Positions 698-46,692 of a stretch of DNA of 64,000 bases are shown piece by piece. The stretch covers positions 496,001-560,000 of the forward strand of contig OZ218960.1 in assembly GCA_965112735.1 (NCBI GenBank). Reading direction: 5' to 3'. How positions within the stretch are numbered: position 1 is the first letter of the stretch; each line of letters opens with the position of its first letter. This DNA is from Phaeosaccion multiseriatum. Its lineage: Eukaryota; Protista; Ochrophyta, other classes. Position numbers and translations under genes: made by a program. The notes beneath the pieces were generated by a model, which was given only the letters and a program-made list of their open reading frames with translations, was not told where the DNA came from and ran no database searches.

Positions 698-3600
698 ATG
701 TCTAACGTTCTAGAGGGACAGCGTAGAATGCTCACGGCCTTCTTCCACGCCACGGGAGGACCCGACTGGTCTAACATCGCAGGATGGAACACGAAAGCAC
801 CAGTAGAAAACTGGGCCGGAGTGACGGTAGAGAATGACTATGTTGTGAAGCTCAATCTGTGGGCGAACCGCCTCAAAGGTGAGAGAGACGTGATTATGGT
901 TGTTCCGCCTGAGGTCCTGAAGAGTATTCTGAAGTATTTCCAGAATGTTCGGAAGTTTTCTCTCTGTTCATGCATCTAGATGTGTTGGGTCTAGAATATT
1001 CGGGAAGGACAATCAAAGCGGGACAAGAGAAGGCACGAGGCGCGGCATGGTGTGGTAGTTCAGCGACCCGTTCGCGTCCCTTTCACTTGATATTAGTGTG
1101 ACCAAAGAACTTTCCTTGCTCCGCAGGGACCATTCCGTTGGAGTTGGGGAAGCTGACAGAGCTTCGAGAACTCCACCTGTCAAAGAACAATCTAGAAGGT
1201 AGGTGGTACGCGTACCTGTTCGCGTCCCATTCACTTGATATTAGTGTGACTCAAGAACTTTCCTCCGCTCCGCAGGGAGCATTCCGAAGGAGTTGGGGAA
1301 GCTTTCAAACCTTCGAGAACTTAAACTGTCATGGAACTCTCTAGAAGGTGAGTGGTACGCGAACCCGTTCGCGTCCCTTTCACTTGATGTAAGTATGGCT
1401 GAAGAACTTTCCTCCGCTCCGCAGGGAACATTCCGCCCGAGCTTGGAAGTCTTGAGAACCTGGCGGTGCTCAACCTGCGGGCCAACGAGCTCACTGGTAA
1501 GTGGTACGCACACCCGTTCGCGTCCCTTTGACTTGATATTAGTGTGACCAAAGAACTTTCCCCCGCTCCATAGGGAGCATTCCAGCTGAGCTTGGAGGTC
1601 TGGAGAAGCTTGAGAAGTTGGGCCTCGCCGACAACAAGCTCACTGGTGAGTGGTACGCACACCCGTCGGCGTCCCTTTCACTTGATTTGAGTATGACCAA
1701 AGAACTGTCCTCCGCTTCGCAGGGAACATTCCACCCGAGCTTAGACGTCTGGGAAATCTTACGGTTTTAAGCCTCTTCTCCAACAAGATCACTGGTGAGT
1801 GGTACGCACACCCGTTCGCGTCCTCTTGACTTGATATTTGTATGACTGAAGAACTATCCTCACATCTCAGGGAGGATTCCGCCGCAATTTGGACAGCTTT
1901 CCAACCTTCGAGAACTTTGGCTCTCCGGGAACCGTCTAGAAGGTGAGTGGTACGCACACCCGTTCGCGTCCCTTTCACCTGATGTTAGTGTGACCAAAGA
2001 TCTTTCCTCCCATCCGCAGGGGACATTCCACCCGAGCTTGGAGGGCTTCAGAACCTTGAGAATCTACACCTCCACAGCAACAAGCTCACTGGTAAGTGGT
2101 ACGCACACCCGTTCGCGTCCCTTTGACTTGATATGAGTATGACCAAAGAACTCCCCTCCGCTCCGCAGAGGGCATTCCAAAGGAGCTTGGAAGTCTGACG
2201 AAGCTTGAGCAATTGTCCCTCTTCCGCAACCAGCTCTCCGGTGAGTGGTACGCACACCCGTTCGCGTCCCTTTGACTTCACTTGATTAGTAGGGTTGAAG
2301 AATTTTCCCCACATCTCAGGGAGCATTCCAGAGGAGCTTGGACAGCTTACGAACCTTCGAGGACTTCGGCTCAACGAGAACAATCTAGATGGTGAGTGGT
2401 ACGCACACCCGTTCGCGTCCCTTTCACTTGATATGAGTATGACCAAAGAACTCTTTTCTCCCACTGCAGGGAGCATTCCACCCGAACTTGGAGGTCTGGA
2501 GAAGCTTGAGGAATGGAACCTCTGCGAGAACAAGCTCAGTGGTAGGTGGTACGCGTACCCGTTCGCGTCCCTTTCACTTGATGTTAGTGTGACCAAAGAA
2601 CTTTCCTTCGCTCCGCAGGGAGCATTCCACCCGAGCTTGGAAGTCTGGAGAAGCTTGAGAAATTGCACCTCTCCCGAAACAAGCTCACTGGTGAGTGGTA
2701 CGCACACCCGTTCGCGTCCCTTTGACTTGATATCAGTATGGCTGAAGAACTTTCCCCGCATCTCAGGGAACATTCCGCCAGAACTAGGACACCTTTCGAA
2801 CCTTCGAGAACTTCAGCTCTACCAGAACAGTCTAGAAGGTAGGTGGTACGCACACCCGTCGGCGTCCCTTTCACTTGATTTGAGTATGACCAAAGAACTT
2901 TCCTTCGCTCCGCAGGGAGCATTCCACCCGAGCTTGGAAGTCTTCGGAACCTGAGGGTGCTCAGCCTCTGGGACAACAAGCTCACTGGTAAGTGGTACGC
3001 ATACCCGTTCGCGTCCCTTTCACTTGATATATGTATGGCTGAAGAACGTTCCCCACATCTCAGGGAATATTCCACCGCAACTAGGACAGCTTTCGAACCT
3101 TCGAGAACTTTGGCTCAACTGGAACAGTCTAGAAGGTAAGTGGTACGCACACCCGTTCGCGTCCCTTTCGCTTGATAGTCGTGTGACAAGAACGTACCTC
3201 CGCTCTGTAGGGAGTATTCCCTTTCACTTGATTGAGTATGACCAAAGAACTCTCCTCCATCTACAGGGAGCATTCCACCCGAGCTTGGACGTCTCGTCAA
3301 GCTCACCCATCTGTTCCTCCATGAAAACCAGCTCTCCGGTGAGTGGTACGCACACCCGTTCGCGTCCCTTTCACTTGATATCAGTGTGACCAAAGAACTT
3401 CCCACCCATCCGCAGGGAGCATTCCAAGAGAGCTTGGACGTCTTCAGAACCTTAAGCGACTGAACCTCAGCAAAAATAACCTCACTGGTGAGTGGTACGC
3501 ACACCCGTTCGCGTCCCTTTGACTTGATGTAAGTATGACCAAAGAACTTTCCTCCGCTCCGCAGGGGAAATTCCGCCCGAGCTTGGAGCTCTGCAGAACC

Positions 3601-6600
3601 TTCAGGATCTGTACCTCTCCAACAATGAGCTCACTGGTGAGTGGTACGCACACCCGTTCGCGTCCCTTTGACTTGATGTTAGTGTGACCAAAGAACTTTC
3701 CTCCGCTCCACAGGGAACATTCCCAAGGAGTTGGGGAAGCTGGCAGAGCTTCGAGGACTTTGGCTCCAAGATAACAATCTAGAAGGTAGGTGGTACGCGA
3801 ACCCCCGCCGCAGCCGCAGCAGTTGGTTGACCCGTTCGCGTCCCTTTCACTTTCTGTTAGTGTGGCCAAAGAACTTTCCTCCACTTCGCAGGGAACACTC
3901 CGCCAGAGCTGGGGCAGCTGATCAACTCAAAGAACTTTCCCCCGCTGCGCAGGCAACACTCCCAAAGAGCTCGGACGTCTCAGCCAGCTGACCGAATTTT
4001 GCCTTCACAGCAACCGGCCTGGTAAGTGGAGCGCATACCCGCTCTTGTCCGCCTCCTTTGGGCTCGTATGTGTATACTGACGCGGGCTCCATTACTGTTT
4101 GAATACGGCAGAGGACGGCACAGCCATGAAGACCTTACGAGAGAGATGGCTTAGTCATGCTGCCCTCGCATCTGCTCCTACTGCGGGCAATTTGACAAGT
4201 GATTCTTCGAGGCAAATTGACGCATTGGACTACAAAACGTATGCAGAGGCGATTTTGTACGGCATTAACCAAGTAGAGGCTCCGATTGCAGTGGGGATTT
4301 ACGGAGAGTGGGGTTGCGGGAAGTCCTTTTTGCTACATGCCATTCGCGAGCAGATATTGCAGCAGCAGAACAAGACGAAGGTTGAGGCAGGAGGGAGTGA
4401 CAAGGGTGCGCAACTACTTGCGCGACGCCTTAAGGGTGCGCGACGCCTCATTGCTTGGCTCGGTCAGTGGTATATGTGGCTGGTGATGGTCTGGTGCTTC
4501 GTGGGGTGGGGGGGCATCAGTGATACAGCCCCATACGGCCACTTCCGCAATGTGCCAGGGATAGTGGACGGAGCCGCTACACAGAGACCGGTCAAGTACA
4601 TCAACGTCGAGTTCAACGCATGTACGTTTACGATTGGCTGTGGGCGATGACTCACTCTCTCCTCCGATGCAATGCCTCCTCTTCTATTCGGCTGTGGCCC
4701 TGATCAGCATCGCGCCCCACCCCGTCTTCCTCCTGTCGTGCTCGCTGACGCTCAGGGCTGTATGCCGGCAGCGATAAGCTCTGGGCAGGCGTGATTCAAG
4801 CAATGTTTAAGGCCGTGGAGGAGCACTCTGACTACGGTGACGAGCTTCGGCTGAGCAGGCTTATCGAGGCGGTGAAGGAGCAGGGCTGGAGGAACTTCGC
4901 TTTCCCGCTGGGCGTGCTCGTAGTGGTAGTGCTGAGCGTACTGACTAGCCTTTCAAAGCTCGATTGGGTAGTGTCGCAACTGAGCGCGGTGTCCGCGGCA
5001 GTGCCTACCCTGCTCGGACTCGTCGGACTGACAGGCGTAGCGCTTCAGACAGGTAAAGTGATTTGTGTTTTATGCGCAAGTCTGAGCGTGTGGTCTCTCT
5101 CTCTACTCTCTCTTAGCTGCCGCCGCTCCCTATTCTCGTTTGCTATGCAGGCGTCTTAGTGTATAGAAATGCCCGGAAGCAAGGCGATATCATCGTTAAA
5201 GAGGCTCAAGACCTTGGAATGGGTGAACAACTCGGTGAGGCAGTATGCTTTGACCTCCGTAAGATTTTTAGCATCAGAGAGGTGCCTCTAACGTCCTTCG
5301 CTCCTGTGTTGTATGTGTCCAGGCTTCATGGCAAGTGTTAGCGATAGGCTTGAATTCCTGTATAAATTCCTAAAGGCCAGTGGCATCAGGCTCTCCGTGG
5401 AGGTGGATGATCTCGACAGGTCAGGAGTCAAGATGGTGTGTTTTTTTCAAGATGTGTGTTTTTATCTCGTGACATGCGTGGGACTTTGGCTTTAAATGTC
5501 CTTCCCCTCTCTGTTGTGCGCTGACTGTTTCAGGTGTGGTGCAAGTCAGGTGATGGCCGTGCTAGAAGCCACTATGCTCCTCCTCTGCAAACACGATGCT
5601 CCCGTGGTTGCCTTCCTCGCGGTCGACCCTCGTGTTGTGGTGACCTCCATCGAGGAGAGTTTTGGCCCTGTCATGCGTGAGGCGGGCATCAGCGGGTCCG
5701 AATACTTGGACAAGATCATCAACTTGCCCTTTTTTCTCCCCGAGGTAGATAAAGAGGCCCAGCGTCTCTTCATGACTGGCCTGCTTTGTGGAAACAATGA
5801 CGACTCAGTCAGGGAGAATCTCAGTGTGCTGGAGTCGTCTGTTTTGAACAGGGAAGGCTACGCATGGGCGAAGTCAAAGGCACCTAAGGAGAGCAGAGAT
5901 GCATCCAAACCGAGGCCGGTGGCTTCCACAGCGTTGAAGCGCGCTCTGTGCAGCTGGGACAAGTGGGATGTCGATGACGTGGAAAGTGGAGGGCCGGGCG
6001 GTGAGGAGGAGGAATGCTGGACAGAATTTGATCGCCTCTTGCCGGCGGTGAACGACGTCACCCCTACTGCAAGCAGTGCTGGCTTGGCTGCCAGAGTGGG
6101 AAAGGACGGACTTGCAGACGTGTGTGTATTTATGAACTGCATGATCATGGCGGGCTTGAAAGCCTGCTCCAAGCCCCAGGAGGCAAAAGGGACAGGAGAA
6201 GAGGCAGCAGACACAGGCGGAGGGGTGGGGTTTGAAGCAACTTCCGGGGGGGGAAGCAGCAACGGCGTGTCGTCAAACGCCGGCAACGACAGCGCGCTGC
6301 CTTCGCCCCATAGGCCCTCCAGCGGCAACGCTGAGGGGGGCGCGGTAAACGAGGGCAACGGCAGCGCGCCGTCTCCACCCGCCGTTAACGGCGACGCTGA
6401 GGGGGGCGCCCCACCGCCGAAGAGAGTGGTTGTAGGAGGAGTTGGAGTGCTGCGGTGCCAATGGGATGAGCTGGAAACCTTCAAGTCCCTCGAGCACTGC
6501 CTGGACAACAACCCGCGGAGGCTTAAACGCATCATCAACATCTTCAACGTGTTGCGAAGGTTGCTTCAGGCCAGGGGCGAGGAGGAATGGCACACCAACC

Positions 6601-7316
6601 CAGTTTTCCGGAAGAAGTTCATTAAATGGGTCATCCTCTGTGAGCAATGGCCGTACCGAACATCTGTGATAGTGACGCTGTTGGATCATCGCATCTTTGA
6701 GGGTGGCTCAGTAAAGCAGCGTAAGCAGAGCGCATGGCTGAAGCCACTCGTGGCTATGGAAGATGACATGAAGGACAACTTCGAGGTGGTGGAGCAGCTC
6801 GCGCACCTCCACCCCAAAGCCGGCAAGCTGCTGCAGATGGACATGGACCCAGAGCGTTTCTGGATGCTCATGCACACCGTGCCCCATCTGACGACCTCCG
6901 ACCTGAAGAGGGGCAGCCCCCTCTTGAGGAACAGTTTCAACCTGAGTCGGTCTGTGCGTGCGCAGGTGGCGACCGGATTCAACGAGCACTTCGTCTTCTC
7001 CGCCGTACAGCATCCGGAGTGCTTGAGAAAGTATGCAGGTGTCGGCCTTCTGAGCTTCCCCAAGGCGAGCGTGGTACAAGATCTTTTGACTTTTGATCAC
7101 CCTGTGTCCTCAGCGGGGGGGGGAGGAGGAACAAGAAGAGGGGGGGAAGGAGGAGAGGAGGATGGGGTTGAGGAGAAGAAACACTCAGAACCTCCCGCGA
7201 AGGAGGAGGATGGGGAGGAGAAGGAGGAACAAGAAGAGGAGGAGGAGGATAACGCCCCACTCAACTGGAGCTTTTTGGTAGAGCATCGAGACTTGATCCC
7301 TCCCTCCATCGTATAG
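698..7316 (+). CDS. LRR-cassette / KAP-family P-loop NTPase (LRRNT cap + ~19 LRR + TM-containing KAP NTPase), multi-exon
   Basis: Exon 1 698-878 encodes an LRRNT cap (LTAFFHATGGPDW..GW..W.GVTV..VVKLNL..NRLKG). 72-nt exons start at 1127,1276,1425,1574,1723,1871,2020,2169,2320,2470,2619,2767,2916,3064,3267,3416,3565,3714, followed by a 69-nt exon 3953-4021, then 4112-4621, 4756-5052, 5151-5234, 5323-5419 and 5534-7316. All are GT-AG and frame-consistent. KAP motifs: SD..DALDYKTYA, Walker A GIYGEWGCGKS, spliced FNAWLY, Walker B spliced DDLDRC, EYLDKII.LPF, NPRRLKRIIN, WVILCEQWPYRTS. Confidence 0.9.
1066..4040 (+). repeat. ~149-bp tandem array: conserved intron + variable 72-nt LRR exon (~21 units including 2 truncated)
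   Basis: Recurrent intron consensus GTRRGTGGTACGCACACCCGTTCGCGTCCCTTTSACTTGAT..AGTRTGACCAAAGAACTTTCCTCCGCTCCGCAG. Exons follow GxIPxELGxLxxLxxLxLxxNxLxG. Confidence 0.95.
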
Positions 7317-7367
7317 ATTGGTTGAGCCGCGCACTGATTATACATTAGACAGTAGAGTTCAGTTTAT

Positions 7368-7456
7368 GGAGTCGCCAAAGGAGTCGCCAATGGAGAGTCG
7401 CGAAAGGAATCGCGAATGAAGTCGCCAATGGAATCGCGAATGTGGTCGCCAAAGGA
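7368..7456. repeat. ~12-bp degenerate tandem repeat (GGAGTCGCCAAW), ~7 copies
   Basis: Directly visible just downstream of the LRR-KAP stop codon. Confidence 0.8.
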
Positions 7457-8204
7457 GGTCACTGTTCGCTGTTGGTGCATGTGTACCCCACGAGCCACAT
7501 AGCAGCTCACGGTTTTGTCATTCTATGAAACTGTCATAATGCTTTTGTCATTCTATGAAAATGTCATAGAAGATTGCGACCCTAAGCGACCGGGCTGCCC
7601 CACAGGAGCCCGTTCTCACCATATCTGCCTGGGCCTGGGCCATTGACATATGGACCATCTAATCTGAGGCCTTCCAACAGCATCGCCCGCCTCTTCTATC
7701 TCCTGCCGCTGTCCGGCCCTACCCAGTCTTCTTGTGGAAGACCGGGCCTTCGCCCTCCTCTCCCTCCTCCGCCCAAAGCATAGACTTGTCGGCCCGTTCG
7801 ACGCATTCTGCTTCTTCCGCTTCTTCGCCGCACCCTCACTTCGCTCCTCTTCTCCTTCCCCCCTGCGCCCTTCCCCTCCGTCCCAGCTTCCAATGGATGG
7901 ATGCGTATGCCAGGTGGGTCAAGCGGAAAAGCAACCTCGTTCACGTAGAAGAGGGCAAGTGACATGTGTCAACATGCTCTATTTCTTATAGTAACACCTA
8001 CACCTTCGCGTCTAATACCATAGCACAAGTCTCGTCTATGTGTGCGATAAAGCAGTAGGAAATGTAGAAGGCGCTAATGTCACCTTGTGCGACCACCACC
8101 ACTCTTACTGGTACCACGGTTGCTACTATCACTGCTGGCACATGTAGTACCTACATAGACCCCATCGCGTTGCTCGGCGGTGAGGGGCATACTCCACGTC
8201 CCCC

Positions 8205-9043: not shown

Positions 9044-12000
9044 ATGGCGGATTCGGCACCAATGGCGCAGTCTGCGGAGAAGCTACATGCGCCACACCTT
9101 ACGCAGGTGGACACCAAGAGCGCGGGTGCGTGGCTGGATAGCCGCAAGTGGTATGAGCAACAGCATAAGGCTCTCGCGAGAAATTTGACACCAGAGCAGG
9201 CCCGGCGCAACCCGGAGGCTACTGTGCAATCGTGCCTAAAGCGCTCGGTAAGAATGCACATCATTAAGGAGATGTTCAGCGATGATGAGAGGACAGCCTT
9301 AACGGCCGACGATGCAGCAACGAGTGCAGCAGTGGAAGCCTCTTTCCTGGCAGCGATTAAACAGCTTGCGGGAAGGACAGCGGAGGCCTCACAGCGCAAC
9401 CCCGTGGAGCTGCAAGATGCTATAAGGAAGAGCCTAGTCATGTCCATGCTGGACAAGGAAGGTAACCACATCGACGTAGAGGAAAGGGTACAGAATCAGC
9501 TCCTTCCCCTGTATGATCTACTCGACAAAAGGGGGTTGGAAGCGGAGTTCATTAACCTCGACACCTACGCGTTCTTACCAACGCATGCCGTTCTGTTGAC
9601 GGAAAGCATTCTGGCCGGCCTAAGGCCCAATGAATTCAAACAGCACGTACAGAGCGCGGCAAGGATGAAGGGCTGGGACCAGCTGAAGAAGAACCCAGAT
9701 GCCTTTAAAAGACTCGTGAAGGAGGAGGCAAAGCTTTTCAGGTCTGCAGACCAGCTGATGGCTAAGCAGGCCAAACAGAAGAAAGACGGCAAGCAAAAGG
9801 AAACCAAGAAGGGTGACCAAAAGAACAATGGCAAGAAGAGCGACGGGAAAGATGGAGGCGGCAAGCAGGGCGGTGGCAAAGGCGACGGCAGTAAGGGAGA
9901 TGGCAAAGCTGAGGGAAATCGTGACGGAAAGAAAGACAAAGACAAGAAACTCACGCATGACCCCAACAAGCCAGGCCCATGTGACCACTGCGGGAGGCCC
10001 AACCACGACAAGGAGCACTGCTGGAAGCTACACCCGGAGCAGAAGCCTGCCAGCCTGTCCCAAGGACACCGGAGAGTTACTTTCGAGGAGGAGCTCACCG
10101 AGGACGCAGCAGCAGACGCAGCGGCGGAGGAAGCAGTCAAGAAGGGAGTGGCAGCAAACCAAGACGCAGGTATGCACCAGCTGTTCCTTAGAGATGATGG
10201 GATGGCGGAGCTCTCTCTCTCGGAGGAGGGACCGGTGGTTAAGATCCCCATCTTGATTGACAGTGGGTCAAGCACCACCAGCCTTAACCTCCCAGCTTTT
10301 CGCCAACTGCGTCACCATTATGGTACCAAGGCCATGGCGCTTGAGCCCATGCCTAGTGCGGTCCAAATGGACACAGCAAATGGCGCAGCAGAGATGACGG
10401 AGATGACTCCTCCACTTACACTGCGTTTCAGCACACCACAGGGGCCTGTCGAGTTGACGGGGCTCCGCCTGGGTTACGAGAGCAGCGATCAGCCTGCTCC
10501 TCTCGTGATCATAGGACGGCAGACAATCAAGGAGCATTTGCCGGACTTGGACCTGAGCAGCCTCAGCAGCAGTGCGGCCAGCGTCCATAACAATCTACAG
10601 CAGCGACGAGCAGCGGTGGTGGAGCAGGTGCCCCTGTCTGAGGACCTGCCCTACATGTTCATGGAGGTGCAAGTGCTGACGGAGGACGAGATCTTGTTTG
10701 ATTCAATTCCCCTCTCTTTCTCTTCCTTCGATCAGGAGGACCACAAGGAGAGAGAGCTGGACAAGCGCTACTCTGATTTGGCCCATGTTTTCGAGAACGC
10801 CAAGGCCAACGGCCTCCCCAGTGACCAGCAACGTAAGTACCACGACTGGTTGTGGTCTCATAAGGATCAGTTTCGTTCTGAACTGATAGACGACCCTCCG
10901 GCTGAGGTGGAGCCGATGAAGCCTCGCTGGAAGCAGAATTTTGTGTGCCCCAAAATCCCCTTTCGTCGCATGAAGCCTAACATGAGGGAGTGGCTTGGAG
11001 CTTTCCTGTGCTTGCTGGCAACTTTTGGCCTTGTGTACAAGAACGCTCAGGCTTGCGCAGCATCACCAGCGCTCGTCACCCCTAAGGCTTCGGGAAGCTT
11101 TCGTGCTACTGTGGACTACCGAGTGGTCAACGAAGGACTCCACCCACAGCACTGGCCCATGGAGACCATCATTCCCCAGCTGCAGCAGATACTGTCCAAG
11201 GCGAGGCGCCTTGCAGTAGCAGACATGAACAAGGGCTATTGGCAATTCCCTGTTGACAAGGCAAGTCAGGAGATGTTCACCATCGCCACCCCGGACGGCC
11301 TTTTCACCCCGACGCGAGTCCCTCAAGGCCTGAGCATCAGCGTCGAGTACTACCAGAGCACCATGCAGACAATCCTCGGAGATCTTTTCGGTAAATGTTG
11401 TGTGGTGTGGCTCGATGATGTGCTGATTTGGGGCGAGGACGATGATGACTTGCTGAACAATTTGACTTTGGTTTTCGATCGATTCGAGAAGGCCAAGCTT
11501 TTTTGCAGCGCACCCAAGTTTGTACTGTATGCTTTGGAACAGACTTACTGCGGTGTGACTTGTGGAGAAAATGGCGTGGGGCAGGACCCTGCACGCCTTC
11601 AGGGGCTGGTGGATTTGGCTGCCCCCACAGACGGAGGGCAATTGATGCAGTTCCTTGCCTCTCTCAACTGGTACCGCAGCCACCTCCCAGACCTCGCTCG
11701 TGTCTCTCTCCCTCTCCAGCAGCTTCTCAATCAGACTCTGGACGGACTGGAGGTGCGCAGCTAAGCACGGGCTGCGAAGCGGCCCATCACAGCAGAGGCG
11801 TGGACGCCCGAGTGTGCAGCGGCGTTTGCAGCGACGAAGGAGCTCTTGTGCTCTGCGGTCACGCTCACGACTCTGAAGGAGGGCTACGCCGTGTGCCTGT
11901 ACACAGATGCATCGCATTTTGGGTGGGGCACCATGATCACGACTTTCCCCAAGGAGCTGTACTCCCCCGGCAAGTCTTTGGGGGACATCCCTCATGAGCC

Positions 12001-13936
12001 ACTGGCCTTTGGCAGTGGCCTTTTCAGCGGCAGTCAGCTCAACTGGCCTACATTGGACAAGGAAGGGTATCCAGTGGTACAAGCATTTCTGCGGTATGAT
12101 TACCTCCTCTGGGGCCCTGACGTTATTGTCAATACGGACCACGCCAACGTGTGCTACATTTTTTATCCGAAGCAGCATGTTACGGCCCTCAGCAAGGCTA
12201 CTGCACAGCGCCTTCAAGGCTGGGCAGTCATCCTCGGCCAATTTCGGTTTCTTTTGCAGCACCTCCCGGGCGAGAAGAATGTGTGGGGAGACATGATCTC
12301 CCGCTTTCTCGCATTGCCTCCAGTGGCAATGCGGCAGCGACACACTCTCTCCCTCCCTCCCCCCCCTCCCCCTGCGTGTCCCACTCTCGTGTCCCTTGAT
12401 GCTCTCAGGTTAAGCCAACAGGAGCATGCCCCACTCTCTCAAAAGGGGGAAGGGGTAGATGGGACTGACAAGATTGTGGAGCCCGTTTCAGATATTGCTC
12501 TCGTGTGGCATGCAGATATGGAGCTCTACAAGACAGCAGCGGGAGAGGTGTGGGTTCCGGCAGCGGACAAGCAGCTTCAGCTACGGTTGTGTACAGAGGC
12601 GCACGCAGGAGGAGCATGCCATAGGCTCAAGACAGCAACCATGGAGCAGCTGCGTTTGATACATTGGCACGGCAAGGCAGATGACGTCAGCGCTTTCATC
12701 AAGCACTGCCTTCACTGCGTGGACTCTAGGGCAGGTGACAAGATACCCCGCCCCCTTGGTGAGACCCTCCACGGCAGCAAGCCTGGAGAGGTGCATCACA
12801 TGGACTGGCTCAGCATTGGAGAGTCGGACTCTGAGTTTGACAAGGGTATGAACAAATACCTCTTTGTGCAGATGGACGACCTCAGCGGCCTTTGCCTACT
12901 CACGGCTCACCCGAGTGTGCACGCTAATCTGGCAGCACGCGACCTTCTTCTGTTTGCCTCTCAGCATGGCATGCCGAGTATATGGGTGAGTGATCAGCCT
13001 ACTCACTTCAAGAATCAGCTCTTGCGGGAGATGGCGGACATTTATAAGGTGAATCATCACTTTTCAGTCGCTAACGTAGCGCACAGCAACGGCACGGTGG
13101 AGCAGCTAATGCGGCAGATCATTGTGGCTTTTCGAGCAGTTCTCTCTGAGCACAAGCTCCCGCCGACGGAGTGGGAGTCAGTCTTGCCCTTGGTCATGTA
13201 TGGTCTCAACTCAGCAGTGCGCAAGCGGACTGGCTTGTCTCCATTGGAGATCATCACAGGGCGGAAACCAGAGGCATTGCTTTCAGCGGAGCTTATCAAG
13301 CTTGGAGAGCAGTGGCACGTCGAGCCCATCAGCACGGAGAAGCTTCAAGCCATCTTGGCTGATACGCGGCAAGCTTTGGACCAGATGCACAAGACGGTGG
13401 CAGGCTCTCGTCAGACGCAGCGAGCTGCGGGGCGTAAGTCAGCCTCCAAGGGCAAGTTGCCCAACTTCATGGTCGGAGAGTTTGTTCTGGCAGCTCGTGT
13501 ACGCAAGAAAGGACGCATGCACAAGCTCACGGCCACCTGGCGCGGGCCCTACAGAGTGCTTGATGCCTCTCATGCCCACGTCTACCTCATTCAGCACCTC
13601 CTCAGCGGCGAGCGGCTTACGGTACATGCCGAGCGGCTCATGTTCTACCACGACGCCACTTTGGACATCACGACGGAGCTGAAGACCCACATCGAGTCGT
13701 CGGATAACCTGGCAAGGTATCAGATTGACTCCTTCGTTTCGCTTCGCAAGGAGCAAGGCGAGTATGAGGTGTTCGTTCACTGGCTTGGCTTTGAAGCCGA
13801 TGAGCGCACCTGGGAGCCTCTTCATCAGCTTATGGAAGACATGACTGTTGCTACCCTGCAGCGGTTTCTCCGACAGATGAAGCTCTCGACAGCGGTCAAG
13901 CGTGACCTGCTGCACATGCACAAGCTGCGTGTGTGA
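9044..13936 (+). pseudogene. gag-pol polyprotein with one in-frame TAA at 11762-11764
   Basis: ORFs 9044-11764 and 11846-13936 share a frame. Motifs: CCHC knuckle CDHCGRPNHDKEHC, protease LIDSGS, RT VDYR/DMNKGYWQ/WLDD, RNase H YTDAS, integrase H..H..CLHC, MDW/SDQ/NGTVE, WRGPY, chromodomain YEVFVHWLGFEADERTWEP. Confidence 0.92.
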
Positions 13937-27971: not shown

Positions 27972-32563
<4,592 letters not shown>

Positions 32564-45237: not shown

Positions 45238-46692
45238 ATGGCGGGCGCTAAGCGCAGCAGCAGCAAAGGCGAGCCACAGAGACGCGCGTGCGACTTCTGC
45301 AGGAGGCAGAAGCGTGGCTGCGACCACAAGGTTCAGTGTGGCCAGTGTAAGAAGCGCGGCATCACCTGCACGTACTCATTCAGGCGCCCCGAAGATGAAG
45401 GGCAATCCCAAGCCCCAGCCCCTGCGTCTGTCATCGCCGAGCCTCTCAAGGTGACAAAGAAGAAGCCCATAGTGAGCCCCGTACCCAAGTCTCAGCTGCC
45501 CGTCGGGGGCGTGCGCTTCACCTCGGCAGCAAGGCCCAAGAAGCGGCCACTGGTCTCCGACGTGGAGGACTCTATCGAGGAGGGGGAGGAGGACTGGGTA
45601 CCCAACGGCACCACCAGCAGCAGTGCCGCCCCAAGCCGACCCAAGCGATCTCGGCGCAGGAGCGTAAGAGTACCATCGACCCCCATCAGAGATGACGAGT
45701 CGTCATCCTCCTCGGAGGCGGAGCAAGATAGGGACACAGGCAGGTCGGGGGAAGGAGAAGGAGAGCAACAAGAGGCAGGATGGGGCGGCCAACGGCCGAG
45801 TCGGCTCGCAGACGTCCTCGATGATGAGAGTCTCAACAGCAGCATGACTGTGCTCCCCCCGCCCGTGAGGAGGAGGGGCAGCAGTAGCTGCAGCAGCAGC
45901 ACCACCAGCAACATCGTCATCCCCCCCTCCACAGCCCGCCCCCCCATGGCGGTGCTGATCCCGCCCAACACGGCGCACGACTTCAACCCACCCACCGCGC
46001 CGGAGGGGGGCTGGGGAGGCACGGGGGCCGGGGAGTTGGGAACGGGCTGGGGAAGGACGCCGCTGGGTGAGTTGCGTAGGGATGGCAACCCGCCGCCCGT
46101 CGGGAGTCCCACACGCAAGGGGCGCAAGGTCGGTCTGATGGCCAAGAACACGGCAGGCAGCAGCAGCAGCAGCAGCGGCAGCATCGGAAGCACAAGTGTT
46201 GGAAACGGCCATTTGTTCGCACCCTCCTATCCCGCCTTATCGGACGCGGCGCTGGAGGCGTTGGTCATGTGGGTGCCCCCTGTGGAGGGCGGTATGCAGA
46301 GGAGCACGAGTACCAGCAGCAGCAGCAGCAGCAGCGTGAGCAGTGCAGGGGGAGGAGGAGGAGGAGGAGGAGGAGGAGGAGGAGGAGGAGGAAGGTCCTT
46401 CCCTTCGGTGACGTCTTGGGCGAACTACAACGGAGTCAGCACGGGCAGCAACGCCGGTAGCCTGCACGCGGGCATTCCAGGCCGGGGCATGTCCATCGGA
46501 GGTGACGGTGGGGGCAGCGGGGCAGACGCAATGCTCAGCCTGGGAAGCGCTGGCTCCTGCCTTCCGCCCCCCATCCCTACCCCAAGAGGAGGCCTGCCCA
46601 TCACGAGGCAGAACTCTCTGGCCGAGGCGGTGGGCAAGCTGGACGAGGATTTACACTCCTCTATGGACGACTCGGTGCTGGACCTGTTCTAG
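45238..46692 (+). CDS. Zn(II)2Cys6 binuclear-cluster transcription factor, intronless
   Basis: ACDFCRRQKRGCDHKVQCGQCKKRGITCTYS at the N-terminus of a 484-aa ORF. Confidence 0.88.
   Translation: MAGAKRSSSKGEPQRRACDFCRRQKRGCDHKVQCGQCKKRGITCTYSFRRPEDEGQSQAPAPASVIAEPLKVTKKKPIVSPVPKSQLPVGGVRFTSAARPKKRPLVSDVEDSIEEGEEDWVPNGTTSSSAAPSRPKRSRRRSVRVPSTPIRDDESSSSSEAEQDRDTGRSGEGEGEQQEAGWGGQRPSRLADVLDDESLNSSMTVLPPPVRRRGSSSCSSSTTSNIVIPPSTARPPMAVLIPPNTAHDFNPPTAPEGGWGGTGAGELGTGWGRTPLGELRRDGNPPPVGSPTRKGRKVGLMAKNTAGSSSSSSGSIGSTSVGNGHLFAPSYPALSDAALEALVMWVPPVEGGMQRSTSTSSSSSSSVSSAGGGGGGGGGGGGGGGRSFPSVTSWANYNGVSTGSNAGSLHAGIPGRGMSIGGDGGGSGADAMLSLGSAGSCLPPPIPTPRGGLPITRQNSLAEAVGKLDEDLHSSMDDSVLDLF

What the first reader, a model, noticed from the sequence alone, without database searches (positions are those of the whole stretch)
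698..7316. LRR sensor fused to a transmembrane KAP NTPase: NLR-like architecture built on KAP
Seen: the LRR array splices in frame (acceptor 4111) into a KAP NTPase with Walker A GEWGCGKS, DDLDRC, YLDKII and NPRRLKR, and with hydrophobic segments inserted between Walker A and B (LIAWLGQWYMWLVMVW; FPLGVLVVVVLSVL; VPTLLGLVGLTGVAL). Known: KAP NTPases include animal KIDINS220/NKPD1 and bacterial phage-exclusion PifA, and typically have TM insertions. Variable LRRs usually pair with NB-ARC, NACHT, ROCO or kinase domains. Inference: a membrane-anchored pathogen-sensing switch. I do not recall a characterised LRR-KAP receptor family.
Basis: partly seen in the sequence, partly recalled or inferred. 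Interest (0 to 1): 0.8.

Follow-up and report, generated by a model that had tools for sequence, protein, structure and literature searches.

The report
Exon-cassette LRR fused to KAP ATPase
An algal gene appears to join about twenty one-repeat-per-exon leucine-rich repeats to a membrane-anchored KAP-type ATPase, a receptor-like design I found described nowhere, but no transcript confirms the join and any immune role is only inferred.

Summary
On the + strand, 698-7316 reads as one 25-exon model. It has an N-cap exon, 18 phase-1 exons of 72 nt (one LRR each), a 69-nt last LRR exon and five KAP NTPase exons. All introns are GT..AG and all phases fit, including the 4021/4112 junction.

Pfam KAP_NTPase passes its cut-off on two exons. 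Four of the five KAP exons abut collinearly on a profile of the 52 nearest relatives.

The nearest relative, from Chrysoparadoxa australica, shares all four KAP-internal intron positions but carries ankyrin and TPR repeats where this gene has LRRs. Other relatives carry TIR, NACHT-LRR, Roc-COR or lysozyme domains. A model of the relative is closest to RdrA, the RADAR anti-phage ATPase.

It is not an NLR: there is no NB-ARC or NACHT domain, and the LRRs are N-terminal.

Caveats:
- No RNA data were available.
- A relic cassette acceptor at 3892 would, if used, put a TGA exactly on the LRR-KAP junction.
- Pathogen sensing is inference only.

This scan had already noted another LRR-KAP gene on a different piece of the same genome (s1-360302); I could not test that. 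I found no paper describing LRR-KAP. Verdict: new variant of known kinds.

The parts
698..878 (+). Exon 1: start codon, cysteine-free LRR N-cap-like segment and a first LRR. No signal-peptide-like hydrophobic stretch.
   Evidence: no hydrophobic segment. Pfam gave no hit. An in-frame stop lies upstream at 641-643 (read).
879..1126 (+). First intron, a hybrid: the 5' part is unique and the last ~62 nt are the cassette-intron 3' part.
   Evidence: Alignment.
1127..3785 (+). Array of 18 exons of 72 nt, phase 1-1, one 24-aa LRR each (G-x-I-P-x-E-L-G-x-L-x-x-L-x-x-L-x-L-x-x-N-x-L-x). They are separated by 76-79-nt near-identical introns, plus one 131-nt intron.
   Evidence: Single exons give weak LRR_4/LRR_8/LRR_1 hits. 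Introns are 85% identical to each other, exons 64%.
3211..3220 (+). Relic of an LRR cassette inside the 131-nt intron. It keeps an acceptor plus 10 nt of exon, then runs into intron tail. Using this acceptor would give a 128-nt out-of-frame exon.
3892..3927 (+). Relic of an LRR cassette (acceptor plus 36 nt of exon, no donor) inside intron 3786-3952. Using this acceptor gives a 130-nt exon, a frameshift and a TGA on the 4021/4112 junction.
3953..4021 (+). Last LRR exon, 69 nt, atypical (G-N-T-P..., ends H-S-N-R-P), phase 1-1.
4022..4111 (+). Junction intron, 90 nt, GT..AG, a hybrid: the first ~50 nt derive from the cassette intron and the rest is unique.
4112..4621 (+). KAP exon K1: linker, Walker A (4303-4326), a W-rich hydrophobic segment (4447-4515), and an end in the F-N-A|W motif.
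   Evidence: Pfam KAP_NTPase E 2.5e-9. Profile E 7e-25. 44% identity to P0012 residues 392-457.
4756..5052 (+). KAP exon K2: the conserved W-L-Y-A-G-S-D-K-L-W motif and two hydrophobic helices (4896-4952, 4995-5051), a predicted membrane hairpin.
   Evidence: E 6e-15.
5151..5234 (+). KAP exon K3: a 28-codon variable linker after the hairpin.
   Evidence: It has no profile match. Its flanking intron positions are shared with the Chrysoparadoxa gene.
5323..5419 (+). KAP exon K4: the strand that ends in Walker B (V-E-V-D-D-L-D, 5397-5417).
   Evidence: 61% identity to P0012; E 2e-8.
5534..7316 (+). KAP exon K5. It holds the rest of the P-loop domain (EYLDKII), a low-complexity spacer, the NPRRLKR motif, a conserved helical C-terminal domain (EQWPYR, DPERFW, FNL), an acidic tail (7116-7250) and the stop.
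   Evidence: Pfam E 2.3e-11. Profile E 4e-78. P0012 E 4e-65. Motif coordinates.

Best explanation
SHOWN. Window 698-7316 (+) is a nuclear gene of an ochrophyte (brown-alga-like) alga. Its only fully in-frame splice model encodes a protein of roughly 1,460 residues. That protein has a cytosolic N-cap and about 20 plant-type LRRs, each encoded by its own 72-nt phase-1 exon of the 'type I' cassette kind known from Ectocarpus ROCO genes. These are joined to a KAP-family P-loop NTPase with a hydrophobic hairpin and a third hydrophobic segment inserted between Walker A and Walker B. A conserved helical C-terminal domain and an acidic tail follow.

The LRR array sits between two hybrid introns. The KAP chassis shares its intron positions with a Chrysoparadoxa gene that carries ankyrin and TPR repeats instead of LRRs.

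INFERRED. The protein faces the cytosol, because there is no signal peptide and no membrane segment between the LRRs and Walker A. It is tethered to a membrane by the hairpin. It works as a ligand-gated NTPase switch: binding of a ligand to the variable concave face of the LRRs releases the KAP domain to bind or hydrolyse NTP and to oligomerise at the membrane. The nearest solved fold, RdrA, and the ORC/Cdc6/STAND relatives behave this way. Output would be either a membrane perturbation (as reported for PifA) or recruitment of partners (as for Kidins220).

The most likely biological role is surveillance or defence, as a third class of exon-shuffled candidate receptor beside LRR-ROCO and NB-ARC-TPR.
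For: Splice model:
- Every site is canonical and every phase fits.
- KAP exons K1, K2, K4 and K5 match a profile of the 52 nearest relatives collinearly, with abutting ends (profile positions 110-200, 203-294, 333-367, 369-686).
- They align collinearly to P0012 residues 392-1317.

Family and integrity:
- Pfam KAP_NTPase is above its cut-off on K1 and K5.
- All 10 invariant columns of the relatives' alignment are kept.

The Chrysoparadoxa relative:
- It shares 4 of 4 KAP-internal intron positions.
- Its TPRs and the linker before the P-loop lie in one exon, so a repeat-KAP fusion is a contiguous ORF there.

Cassette origin:
- The first and junction introns are hybrids of unique and cassette sequence.
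- LRR cassettes are about 10 times deeper than the KAP part in contigs of four DNA runs, so they belong to a genome-wide family.
- One contig spans 3775-7400 without a difference, so the LRR-KAP adjacency is not an assembly slip.

Repeat variability: variable LRR positions are 41% identical, with pN 0.35 against pS 0.21 in the closest pairs. Scaffold positions are 83% identical, with pN 0.04 against pS 0.22.

Defence association:
- Of the 52 relatives, 7 carry TIR_2, 3 TIR, 3 GH25 lysozyme, 2 M23 peptidase, 1 NACHT plus LRR (amphioxus), 1 Roc-COR and 1 nSTAND1.
- There are weak hits to QatA, PifA and PDC-S20.
- The proxy model's best solved match is RdrA of RADAR (Z 17.4, 345 residues aligned, rmsd 7.8). 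ORC/Cdc6, BrxC and NRC NB-ARC follow.

Published precedent: type I 72-nt LRR exons, and relic exons inside introns of EST-supported genes, are described for Ectocarpus (PMC3341825).
Against: - No RNA evidence. The four runs that hold the stretch are DNA contigs without joints.
- The relic acceptor at 3891|3892 looks as good as the working cassette acceptors and comes first after the cassette intron. If it is used, the frame shifts and TG+A makes a stop on the junction. The relic acceptor at 3210|3211 would also break the frame.
- An ATG at 4126, 14 nt into K1, could start a KAP-only protein.
- Three hydrophobic segments is an odd number. They cannot all span the membrane if the P-loop domain is to stay whole.
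- There is no recognisable effector domain.
- High variability between repeats of one protein is normal for any LRR protein. It is not evidence of diversifying selection between alleles.
- The structural evidence comes from a proxy, the Chrysoparadoxa relative, with mean pLDDT 70.9 and low confidence in the inserts.
- No immune phenotype is known for any eukaryotic KAP protein that I could find.
Confidence: 0.5

Rival explanations
1. It is a non-immune membrane scaffold. The LRR-KAP protein is real but works like animal Kidins220/ARMS. In this reading it is a stable membrane platform whose repeat domain binds fixed cellular partners, and whose NTPase governs assembly of a signalling or trafficking complex, with no role in non-self recognition.
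For: Kidins220 is the best-studied eukaryotic KAP protein. It has the same order of parts: N-terminal repeats, then a KAP domain with membrane inserts (family knowledge; Kidins220-like proteins appear as distant hits). There is no effector domain. The protein ends in S-I-V, formally a PDZ-ligand-like end (the Kidins220 parallel is from memory).
Against: The LRRs come from the genome-wide shuffling cassette family, and relic cassettes in the introns point to turnover. The nearest relative has swapped the repeat type on the same chassis. Relatives are enriched in TIR, NACHT and lysozyme partners.
Confidence: 0.2
2. The fusion is not made. Splicing uses the relic acceptor at 3892 (or 3211), so the message is frameshifted and stops at the junction. 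The locus then yields an LRR-only protein, a KAP-only protein from the ATG at 4126, or both. Alternatively it is a very young pseudogene.
For: The acceptor at 3891|3892 has a full cassette-type pyrimidine tract and is the first AG after a complete cassette intron. Using it gives a 130-nt exon and a TGA at 4020-4021 plus 4112. No RNA support exists for any junction. Many type I LRR loci in Ectocarpus are neither ROCO nor kinase genes (PMC3341825).
Against: Only 90 nt separate the last LRR exon from K1, which leaves no room for a terminator and a promoter. All five KAP exons, their splice sites and all invariant residues are intact. The K1 acceptor has the same phase as the cassettes. The linker in K1 is homologous to a linker that is contiguous with the repeats in the Chrysoparadoxa gene. 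Relic exons inside introns are reported in expressed ROCO genes.
Confidence: 0.25
3. It is an assembly artefact: a collapsed or misplaced LRR cassette array has been put next to an unrelated KAP gene.
For: The cassettes are highly repeated in the genome. Logan contigs break up inside the array.
Against: In each of four runs (one sample) a single contig runs from 3775, inside the last 72-nt LRR exon, through the relic, the last LRR exon and the junction to 7324 (one run) or 7400 (three runs), without a difference. Those runs may be the assembly's own sample.
Confidence: 0.03

Closest known systems
Chrysoparadoxa australica 'unnamed protein product' (P0012, 1371 aa, contig CAXMZZ020000663.1)
   Same: It belongs to the same KAP subfamily. 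K5 matches at E 4e-65 (43% identity over the matched stretches; 32% in one 571-column BLASTP alignment), K1 at 44% and K4 at 61%. It has the same motifs and C-terminal domain, hydrophobic inserts in the same places, and all four of this gene's KAP-internal intron positions.
   Different: Its N-terminal repeats are ankyrin plus TPR_10/TPR_12, encoded in one large exon, not LRR cassettes. It has many extra introns in the 3' half. Its first hydrophobic insert is about twice as long.
Brown-algal LRR-ROCO candidate receptors (Zambounis 2012, PMC3341825; Teng 2024, PMC11378527)
   Same: N-terminal array of 'type I' 72-nt, one-LRR exons with the G-x-x-P-x-x-L...N-x-L pattern, symmetric phases, relic exons in introns, and an NTPase immediately after the array.
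   Different: The NTPase here is a membrane-inserted KAP P-loop domain, not a Roc GTPase with COR. Neither paper mentions KAP.
Kidins220/ARMS (animal KAP protein)
   Same: N-terminal repeat domain followed by a KAP NTPase with membrane helices inserted in the P-loop domain. It is a distant sequence relative.
   Different: It has ankyrin repeats instead of LRRs, four membrane helices, and SAM and other C-terminal modules not found here. It acts as a neuronal scaffold and is not known as an immune receptor (family knowledge).
Bacterial defence KAP ATPases PifA and QatA; RdrA of RADAR
   Same: The KAP P-loop core gives weak HMM hits to QatA, PifA and PDC-S20. The proxy model's best solved match is RdrA, at Z 17.4. 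PifA acts at the membrane in T7 exclusion (cited in PMC13001434).
   Different: Scores are far below the family cut-offs (QatA 37 bits against 600). RdrA is not detectable by sequence. None of these proteins has LRRs.
Branchiostoma lanceolatum XP_066275097.1 (P0033): KAP + NACHT + LRR
   Same: A eukaryotic protein of the same KAP subfamily that combines KAP with LRRs and an immune-type NTPase.
   Different: Its LRRs are C-terminal to a NACHT domain and KAP is the N-terminal module. It is a true NLR with a KAP head, not an LRR-KAP.
Plant and animal NLRs (STAND: NB-ARC or NACHT plus LRR)
   Same: A variable LRR domain coupled to an oligomerising AAA+-like P-loop switch. NRC NB-ARC domains are among the structural matches of the proxy model (Z 11.5-11.8).
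   Different: There is no NB-ARC or NACHT signature, the LRRs are N-terminal, and membrane helices sit inside the NTPase.

Membership tests
KAP family P-loop NTPase (Pfam PF07693) | The family HMM matches above its curated cut-off | tested here: met
   K1 scores 37.3 bits and K5 44 bits against a cut-off of 20. The atlas neighbours are all KAP_NTPase clusters.
KAP family P-loop NTPase (Pfam PF07693) | Walker A G-x4-G-K-S/T and Walker B h-h-h-h-D-D-x-D-R | tested here: met
   GEWGCGKS at 4303-4326. VEVDDLD|R at 5397-5419 plus the first base of K5.
KAP family P-loop NTPase (Pfam PF07693) | Two or four membrane helices inserted inside the P-loop domain (eukaryotic members; definition from Aravind et al. 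2004, recalled from memory and as cited in PMC13001434) | tested here: inconclusive
   A hydropathy scan finds three segments between Walker A and B, one in K1 and two in K2. The hairpin in K2 is clear. The status of the single W-rich K1 segment is open. No dedicated topology predictor was available.
KAP subfamily with the NPRR-x-KR / EQWPYR C-terminal domain | Collinear match of the whole NTPase and C-terminal domain, with the invariant residues kept | tested here: met
   Profile of 52 relatives: K1, K2, K4 and K5 match in order. The ten invariant columns are kept.
NLR / STAND receptors | NB-ARC or NACHT nucleotide-binding domain | tested here: not met
   No NB-ARC or NACHT hit on any exon. 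There is only a weak AAA_16 hit (E 0.046) over the P-loop.
NLR / STAND receptors | Sensor repeats C-terminal to the NTPase | tested here: not met
   The LRR exons (698-4021) precede the NTPase exons (4112-7316).
Brown-algal LRR-ROCO | Type I 72-nt exons, each encoding one 24-aa LRR | tested here: met
   There are 18 such exons, phase 1-1, with a consensus that fits the published pattern (PMC3341825).
Brown-algal LRR-ROCO | Roc GTPase and COR domains after the LRRs | tested here: not met
   No Roc or COR hit. The domain after the LRRs is KAP_NTPase.
Kidins220/ARMS orthologues | N-terminal ankyrin repeats and a C-terminal SAM domain | tested here: not met
   Pfam finds no Ank or SAM on any exon. 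The N-terminal repeats are LRRs.
QatA / PifA anti-phage ATPases | Match at equivalog level | tested here: not met
   QatA NF041923 scores 37.1 and 25 bits against a cut-off of 600. The PADLOC PifA hit is E 2.3e-5 over the P-loop only.

The most novel reading that the evidence does not exclude
KAP NTPases are a third, membrane-embedded class of NLR-analogous immune receptors in ochrophyte algae. Interchangeable repeat sensors sit on one conserved KAP chassis: exon-shuffled LRR cassettes here, ankyrin-TPR in Chrysoparadoxa. On sensing a virus or pathogen ligand they trigger KAP oligomerisation and membrane damage or cell death. That would be the eukaryotic counterpart of bacterial KAP defences such as PifA, and would link bacterial and algal immunity through a family not so far considered.
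Probability: 0.2. Interest if true: 0.85.

Novelty: new variant of a known kind. Interest (0 to 1): 0.6.

Why it matters
Brown algae and their relatives have no clear orthologues of plant or animal immune receptors. The only published candidates are LRR-ROCO GTPases and NB-ARC-TPR proteins, both recognised by exon-shuffled repeat cassettes.

An LRR-cassette array on a membrane-inserted KAP ATPase would add a third candidate class. It would also show that the shuffling cassette system supplies more than one kind of signalling chassis.

It would extend KAP NTPases well beyond animals and bacteria. In animals they are known as the Kidins220 neuronal scaffold, and in bacteria as phage exclusion factors.

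The sensor swap on a chassis with shared introns (LRR here, ankyrin-TPR in Chrysoparadoxa) is the modular pattern that defines NLR evolution. That makes the idea of KAP as an immune switch testable in an alga.

Tried and rejected
RNA support
- The look-up of sequencing runs gave four runs of one sample, all DNA contigs. Read laying showed no joints. Expression and splice use therefore stay open.

Full-length relatives
- The search for homologous proteins with K5 found only distant KAP cores, because proteins over 1,038 aa were out of its range.
- The same tool with P0012's KAP region found P0012 itself and distant bacterial or Kidins220-like proteins.
- The exhaustive search found a single protein below 1e-30.

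Organism identity
- A 967-aa ORF from the window gave only low-complexity chance hits.
- The scan's notes gave nothing.
- The Chrysoparadoxa gene differs in GC content (49% in L001, against about 54% in this stretch of the window) and in intron load, so the window is not from that assembly.

Other collections
- Viral and metagenome collections hold no close locus.
- PDB searches by sequence, with a single protein and with a profile, gave nothing significant.
- Foldseek gave no match at E <= 0.001. Only the VIA second look gave usable Z-scores.

Papers
- Aravind et al. 2004 on the KAP family is not held. What I say of it is from memory and from its citation in PMC13001434.
- The supplementary table of Zambounis 2012, which lists the 46 other type I LRR loci, is not held. 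I cannot say whether an Ectocarpus LRR-KAP was already listed there.

Readings rejected
- A true NLR: there is no NB-ARC or NACHT domain.
- A ROCO: there is no Roc-COR.
- A secreted or extracellular LRR receptor: there is no signal peptide, and no membrane segment lies between the LRRs and Walker A.
Full report
1. WHAT IS THERE

The stretch is eukaryotic and intron-rich. On the + strand an ATG at 698 opens a 181-nt exon that ends at a GT donor (878|879). Eighteen exons of exactly 72 nt follow. Each is flanked by AG and GT, and each enters and leaves with one carried base. After them come a 69-nt exon (3953-4021) and five larger exons: 4112-4621, 4756-5052, 5151-5234, 5323-5419 and 5534-7316. 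All phases fit, and the reading frame closes at TAG 7314-7316.

The donor after 4021 and the acceptor before 4112 join G+AG into a Glu codon and run on into the KAP frame.

2. THE LRR PART

Each 72-nt exon encodes one 24-residue repeat. The Ile, Pro, three Leu and Asn positions are invariant, and eleven positions are variable.

This is the 'type I LRR exon' that Zambounis et al. described for Ectocarpus ROCO genes and 46 other loci (PMC3341825). Teng et al. described it for four brown algae (PMC11378527). Taken singly, eight of ten exons give a weak best hit to an LRR family.

Identity between cassettes:

| Compared | Identity or divergence |
|---|---|
| Introns (76-79 nt) | 85% identical |
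| Exons overall | 64% identical |
| Variable LRR positions | 41% identical |
| Scaffold LRR positions | 83% identical |
| Synonymous differences between exons | pS 0.45-0.56 |

Synonymous differences far exceed intron divergence. The introns are therefore homogenised or constrained, and the exons are not. In the 19 closest exon pairs, pN/pS is about 1.6 at variable positions and 0.2 at scaffold positions. This describes repeats of one protein, and the pairs are not independent, so it is not a test of selection between alleles.

The cassette-intron motif occurs 16 times, only on the + strand and only within 1354-3669, against 0 expected. In contigs of four DNA runs the cassette part is about ten times deeper than the KAP part, so the cassettes belong to a genome-wide family.

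Exon 1 has no hydrophobic stretch. It looks like a cysteine-free LRR N-cap, although Pfam does not call it.

3. THE KAP PART

Pfam KAP_NTPase passes its cut-off on K1 (E 2.5e-9) and on K5 (E 2.3e-11).

The exhaustive search of 1.84 billion representatives found 793 relatives with E up to 0.001, 311 of them below 1e-10 and only one below 1e-30. I built a profile from the 52 best long ones (A1). Scored exon by exon, it matches as follows:

| Exon | Profile positions | E-value |
|---|---|---|
| K1 | 110-200 | 7e-25 |
| K2 | 203-294 | 6e-15 |
| K4 | 333-367 | 2e-8 |
| K5 | 369-686 | 4e-78 |

The ends abut, which is strong support for the four KAP-internal splice sites. K3 is a variable linker and has no match.

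- Walker A at 4303-4326
- F-N-A|W across the K1/K2 junction
- Walker B at 5397-5417, followed by the split Arg and then Cys
- EYLDKII at 5700-5720
- NPRRLKR at 6510-6530
- EQWPYR, DPERFW and FNL in a C-terminal domain conserved throughout the subfamily

All ten invariant columns of A1 are kept.

The hydrophobic segments lie at 4447-4515, 4896-4952 and 4995-5051, all between Walker A and B. The last two form an obvious hairpin. The first is a single W-rich 23-residue segment. Because three segments cannot all cross the membrane without splitting the P-loop domain, I take it for an interfacial or re-entrant element.

4. THE NEAREST RELATIVE AND WHAT IT TEACHES

The one close relative is P0012, a 1371-residue 'unnamed protein product' of Chrysoparadoxa australica, an ochrophyte near the brown algae. 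Pfam finds ankyrin repeats, TPR_10/TPR_12 repeats and then KAP_NTPase.

I mapped its exons on its contig (L001). All four KAP-internal intron positions of the window's gene recur there: F-N-A|W, the end of the second hairpin helix, E-L|G|F-M-A, and D-D-L-D|R|C. It also has many further introns where the window has the single exon K5.

Its TPRs and the linker that aligns with K1 residues 23-40 lie in one exon. In that gene, therefore, the repeat-to-KAP fusion is a contiguous ORF. The two genes thus descend from one intron-bearing eukaryotic KAP gene and differ in the kind of N-terminal repeat.

In the window the swap has left marks. The first intron is unique at its 5' end and cassette-like at its 3' end. 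The junction intron is cassette-like at its 5' end and unique at its 3' end. This is what intronic recombination of phase-1 cassettes into a phase-1 intron would leave.

5. PARTNERS OF THE SUBFAMILY AND FOLD

Among the 52 relatives:
- 7 carry TIR_2 and 3 carry TIR.
- 3 carry a GH25 lysozyme and 2 an M23 peptidase.
- 2 carry ankyrin repeats.
- One each carries Roc-COR, nSTAND1, a kinase, and NACHT plus LRR. The last is amphioxus XP_066275097.1.
- One relative comes from the green alga Cymbomonas.
- None has N-terminal LRRs directly before KAP.

PADLOC and NCBIfam give only weak hits to QatA, PifA and PDC-S20.

No solved structure is detectable by sequence. I therefore folded the KAP region of P0012 with 66 relatives as its alignment. 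Mean pLDDT was 70.9. Confidence was above 90 in the P-loop core and the C-terminal helical domain, and low in the first insert and the spacer.

Foldseek gave nothing at E <= 0.001. The VIA second look ranked the matches as follows:

| Match | Z |
|---|---|
| RdrA, the ring-forming ATPase of the RADAR anti-phage system (345 residues aligned, rmsd 7.8) | 17.4 |
| Archaeal and eukaryotic ORC/Cdc6 | 12-15 |
| BrxC of BREX | 12.5 |
| NB-ARC domains of plant NRC helpers | 11.5-11.8 |

This places KAP among the oligomerising AAA+-like initiator/STAND-type switches. It is a proxy model of a relative, not of this protein.

6. HOW IT MOST LIKELY WORKS

Shown: the architecture, the family, the intactness of the motifs, and the cassette origin of the LRRs.

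Inferred:
- The LRRs and the NTPase face the cytosol, because there is no signal peptide and no membrane segment lies between them.
- The hairpin tethers the protein to a membrane.
- Ligand binding on the variable LRR face gates NTP-dependent oligomerisation of the KAP domain.
- Output is either membrane perturbation, as for PifA (described in PMC13001434), or partner recruitment, as for Kidins220.

The defence reading rests on association only.

7. WHAT COULD UNDO IT

No RNA was available. The four runs that hold the stretch are DNA contigs of one sample. They do show that one contig spans 3775-7400, so the adjacency is not an assembly slip.

More serious are two relic cassettes inside introns.
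- At 3211 an acceptor is followed by 10 nt of exon and then intron tail.
- At 3892 an acceptor with a full cassette-type tract is followed by 36 nt of exon, no donor, and a second intron tail that ends at the working acceptor 3952|3953.

If 3892 is used, the exon is 130 nt, the frame shifts, and the left-over TG meets the A of 4112 to form TGA exactly on the junction. The product would then be LRR-only. An ATG at 4126 could start a KAP-only protein.

Against this rival:
- The gap is only 90 nt.
- The KAP exons are intact.
- The linker is shared with the Chrysoparadoxa gene.
- Relic exons are published inside introns of expressed ROCO genes.
I could not test that note.

8. COMPARISON AND NOVELTY

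- It is a member of the KAP family (tests met).
- It is not an NLR: there is no NB-ARC or NACHT domain and the repeat order is reversed.
- It is not a ROCO: there is no Roc-COR.
- It is not a Kidins220 orthologue: there are no ankyrin repeats and no SAM domain.
- It resembles ROCO and Kidins220 in the order of its parts, and NLRs in its logic.

No paper in the library holds KAP NTPase terms together with 'leucine-rich repeat'. The two brown-algal receptor papers do not mention KAP. The supplementary list of the 46 other type I LRR loci of Ectocarpus was not available, so a bare listing there cannot be excluded.

I rate it a new variant of known kinds. It is interesting to algal immunity and to the KAP field, but untested.

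9. STEP LEFT OUT

The organism was not identified.

Noticed in passing
window 1199-3713: The cassette introns are much more alike (85%) than the synonymous sites of the exons they separate (pS 0.45-0.56). The introns are therefore homogenised or under constraint, while the exons diverge.
   Followed up: partly
window 3801-3833: The cassette-type intron 3786-3891 carries an insertion of about 25 nt (a C/G-rich run) relative to the other cassette introns. It shows up in the alignment.
   Followed up: no
window 9044-13936: Two long + strand ORFs of a Ty3/gypsy chromovirus-type retrotransposon (RVT_1, RT_RNaseH, rve, Chromo) lie 1.7 kb downstream of the gene.
   Followed up: partly
window 7365-7460: A short tandem repeat with a period of about 11-12 nt lies just 3' of the stop codon (read).
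   Followed up: no
window 7299-7313: The protein ends P-P-S-I-V after a long acidic tail. Formally this is a class I PDZ-ligand-like end, as Kidins220 has. The parallel is from memory only.
   Followed up: no
window 28379-31282 and 45238-46692: There is a 967-aa ORF with a C2HC zinc finger and no detectable relatives, and a 484-aa ORF with a Zn(2)Cys(6) cluster domain.
   Followed up: partly
P0033 (Branchiostoma lanceolatum XP_066275097.1): An amphioxus protein has a KAP NTPase domain of this subfamily in front of a NACHT-LRR module, that is, an NLR with a KAP head.
   Followed up: partly
L001:16-6759: The Chrysoparadoxa ANK-TPR-KAP gene starts 15 nt from the end of its contig, in the middle of an ankyrin repeat. 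Its N-terminus is probably cut off.
   Followed up: no
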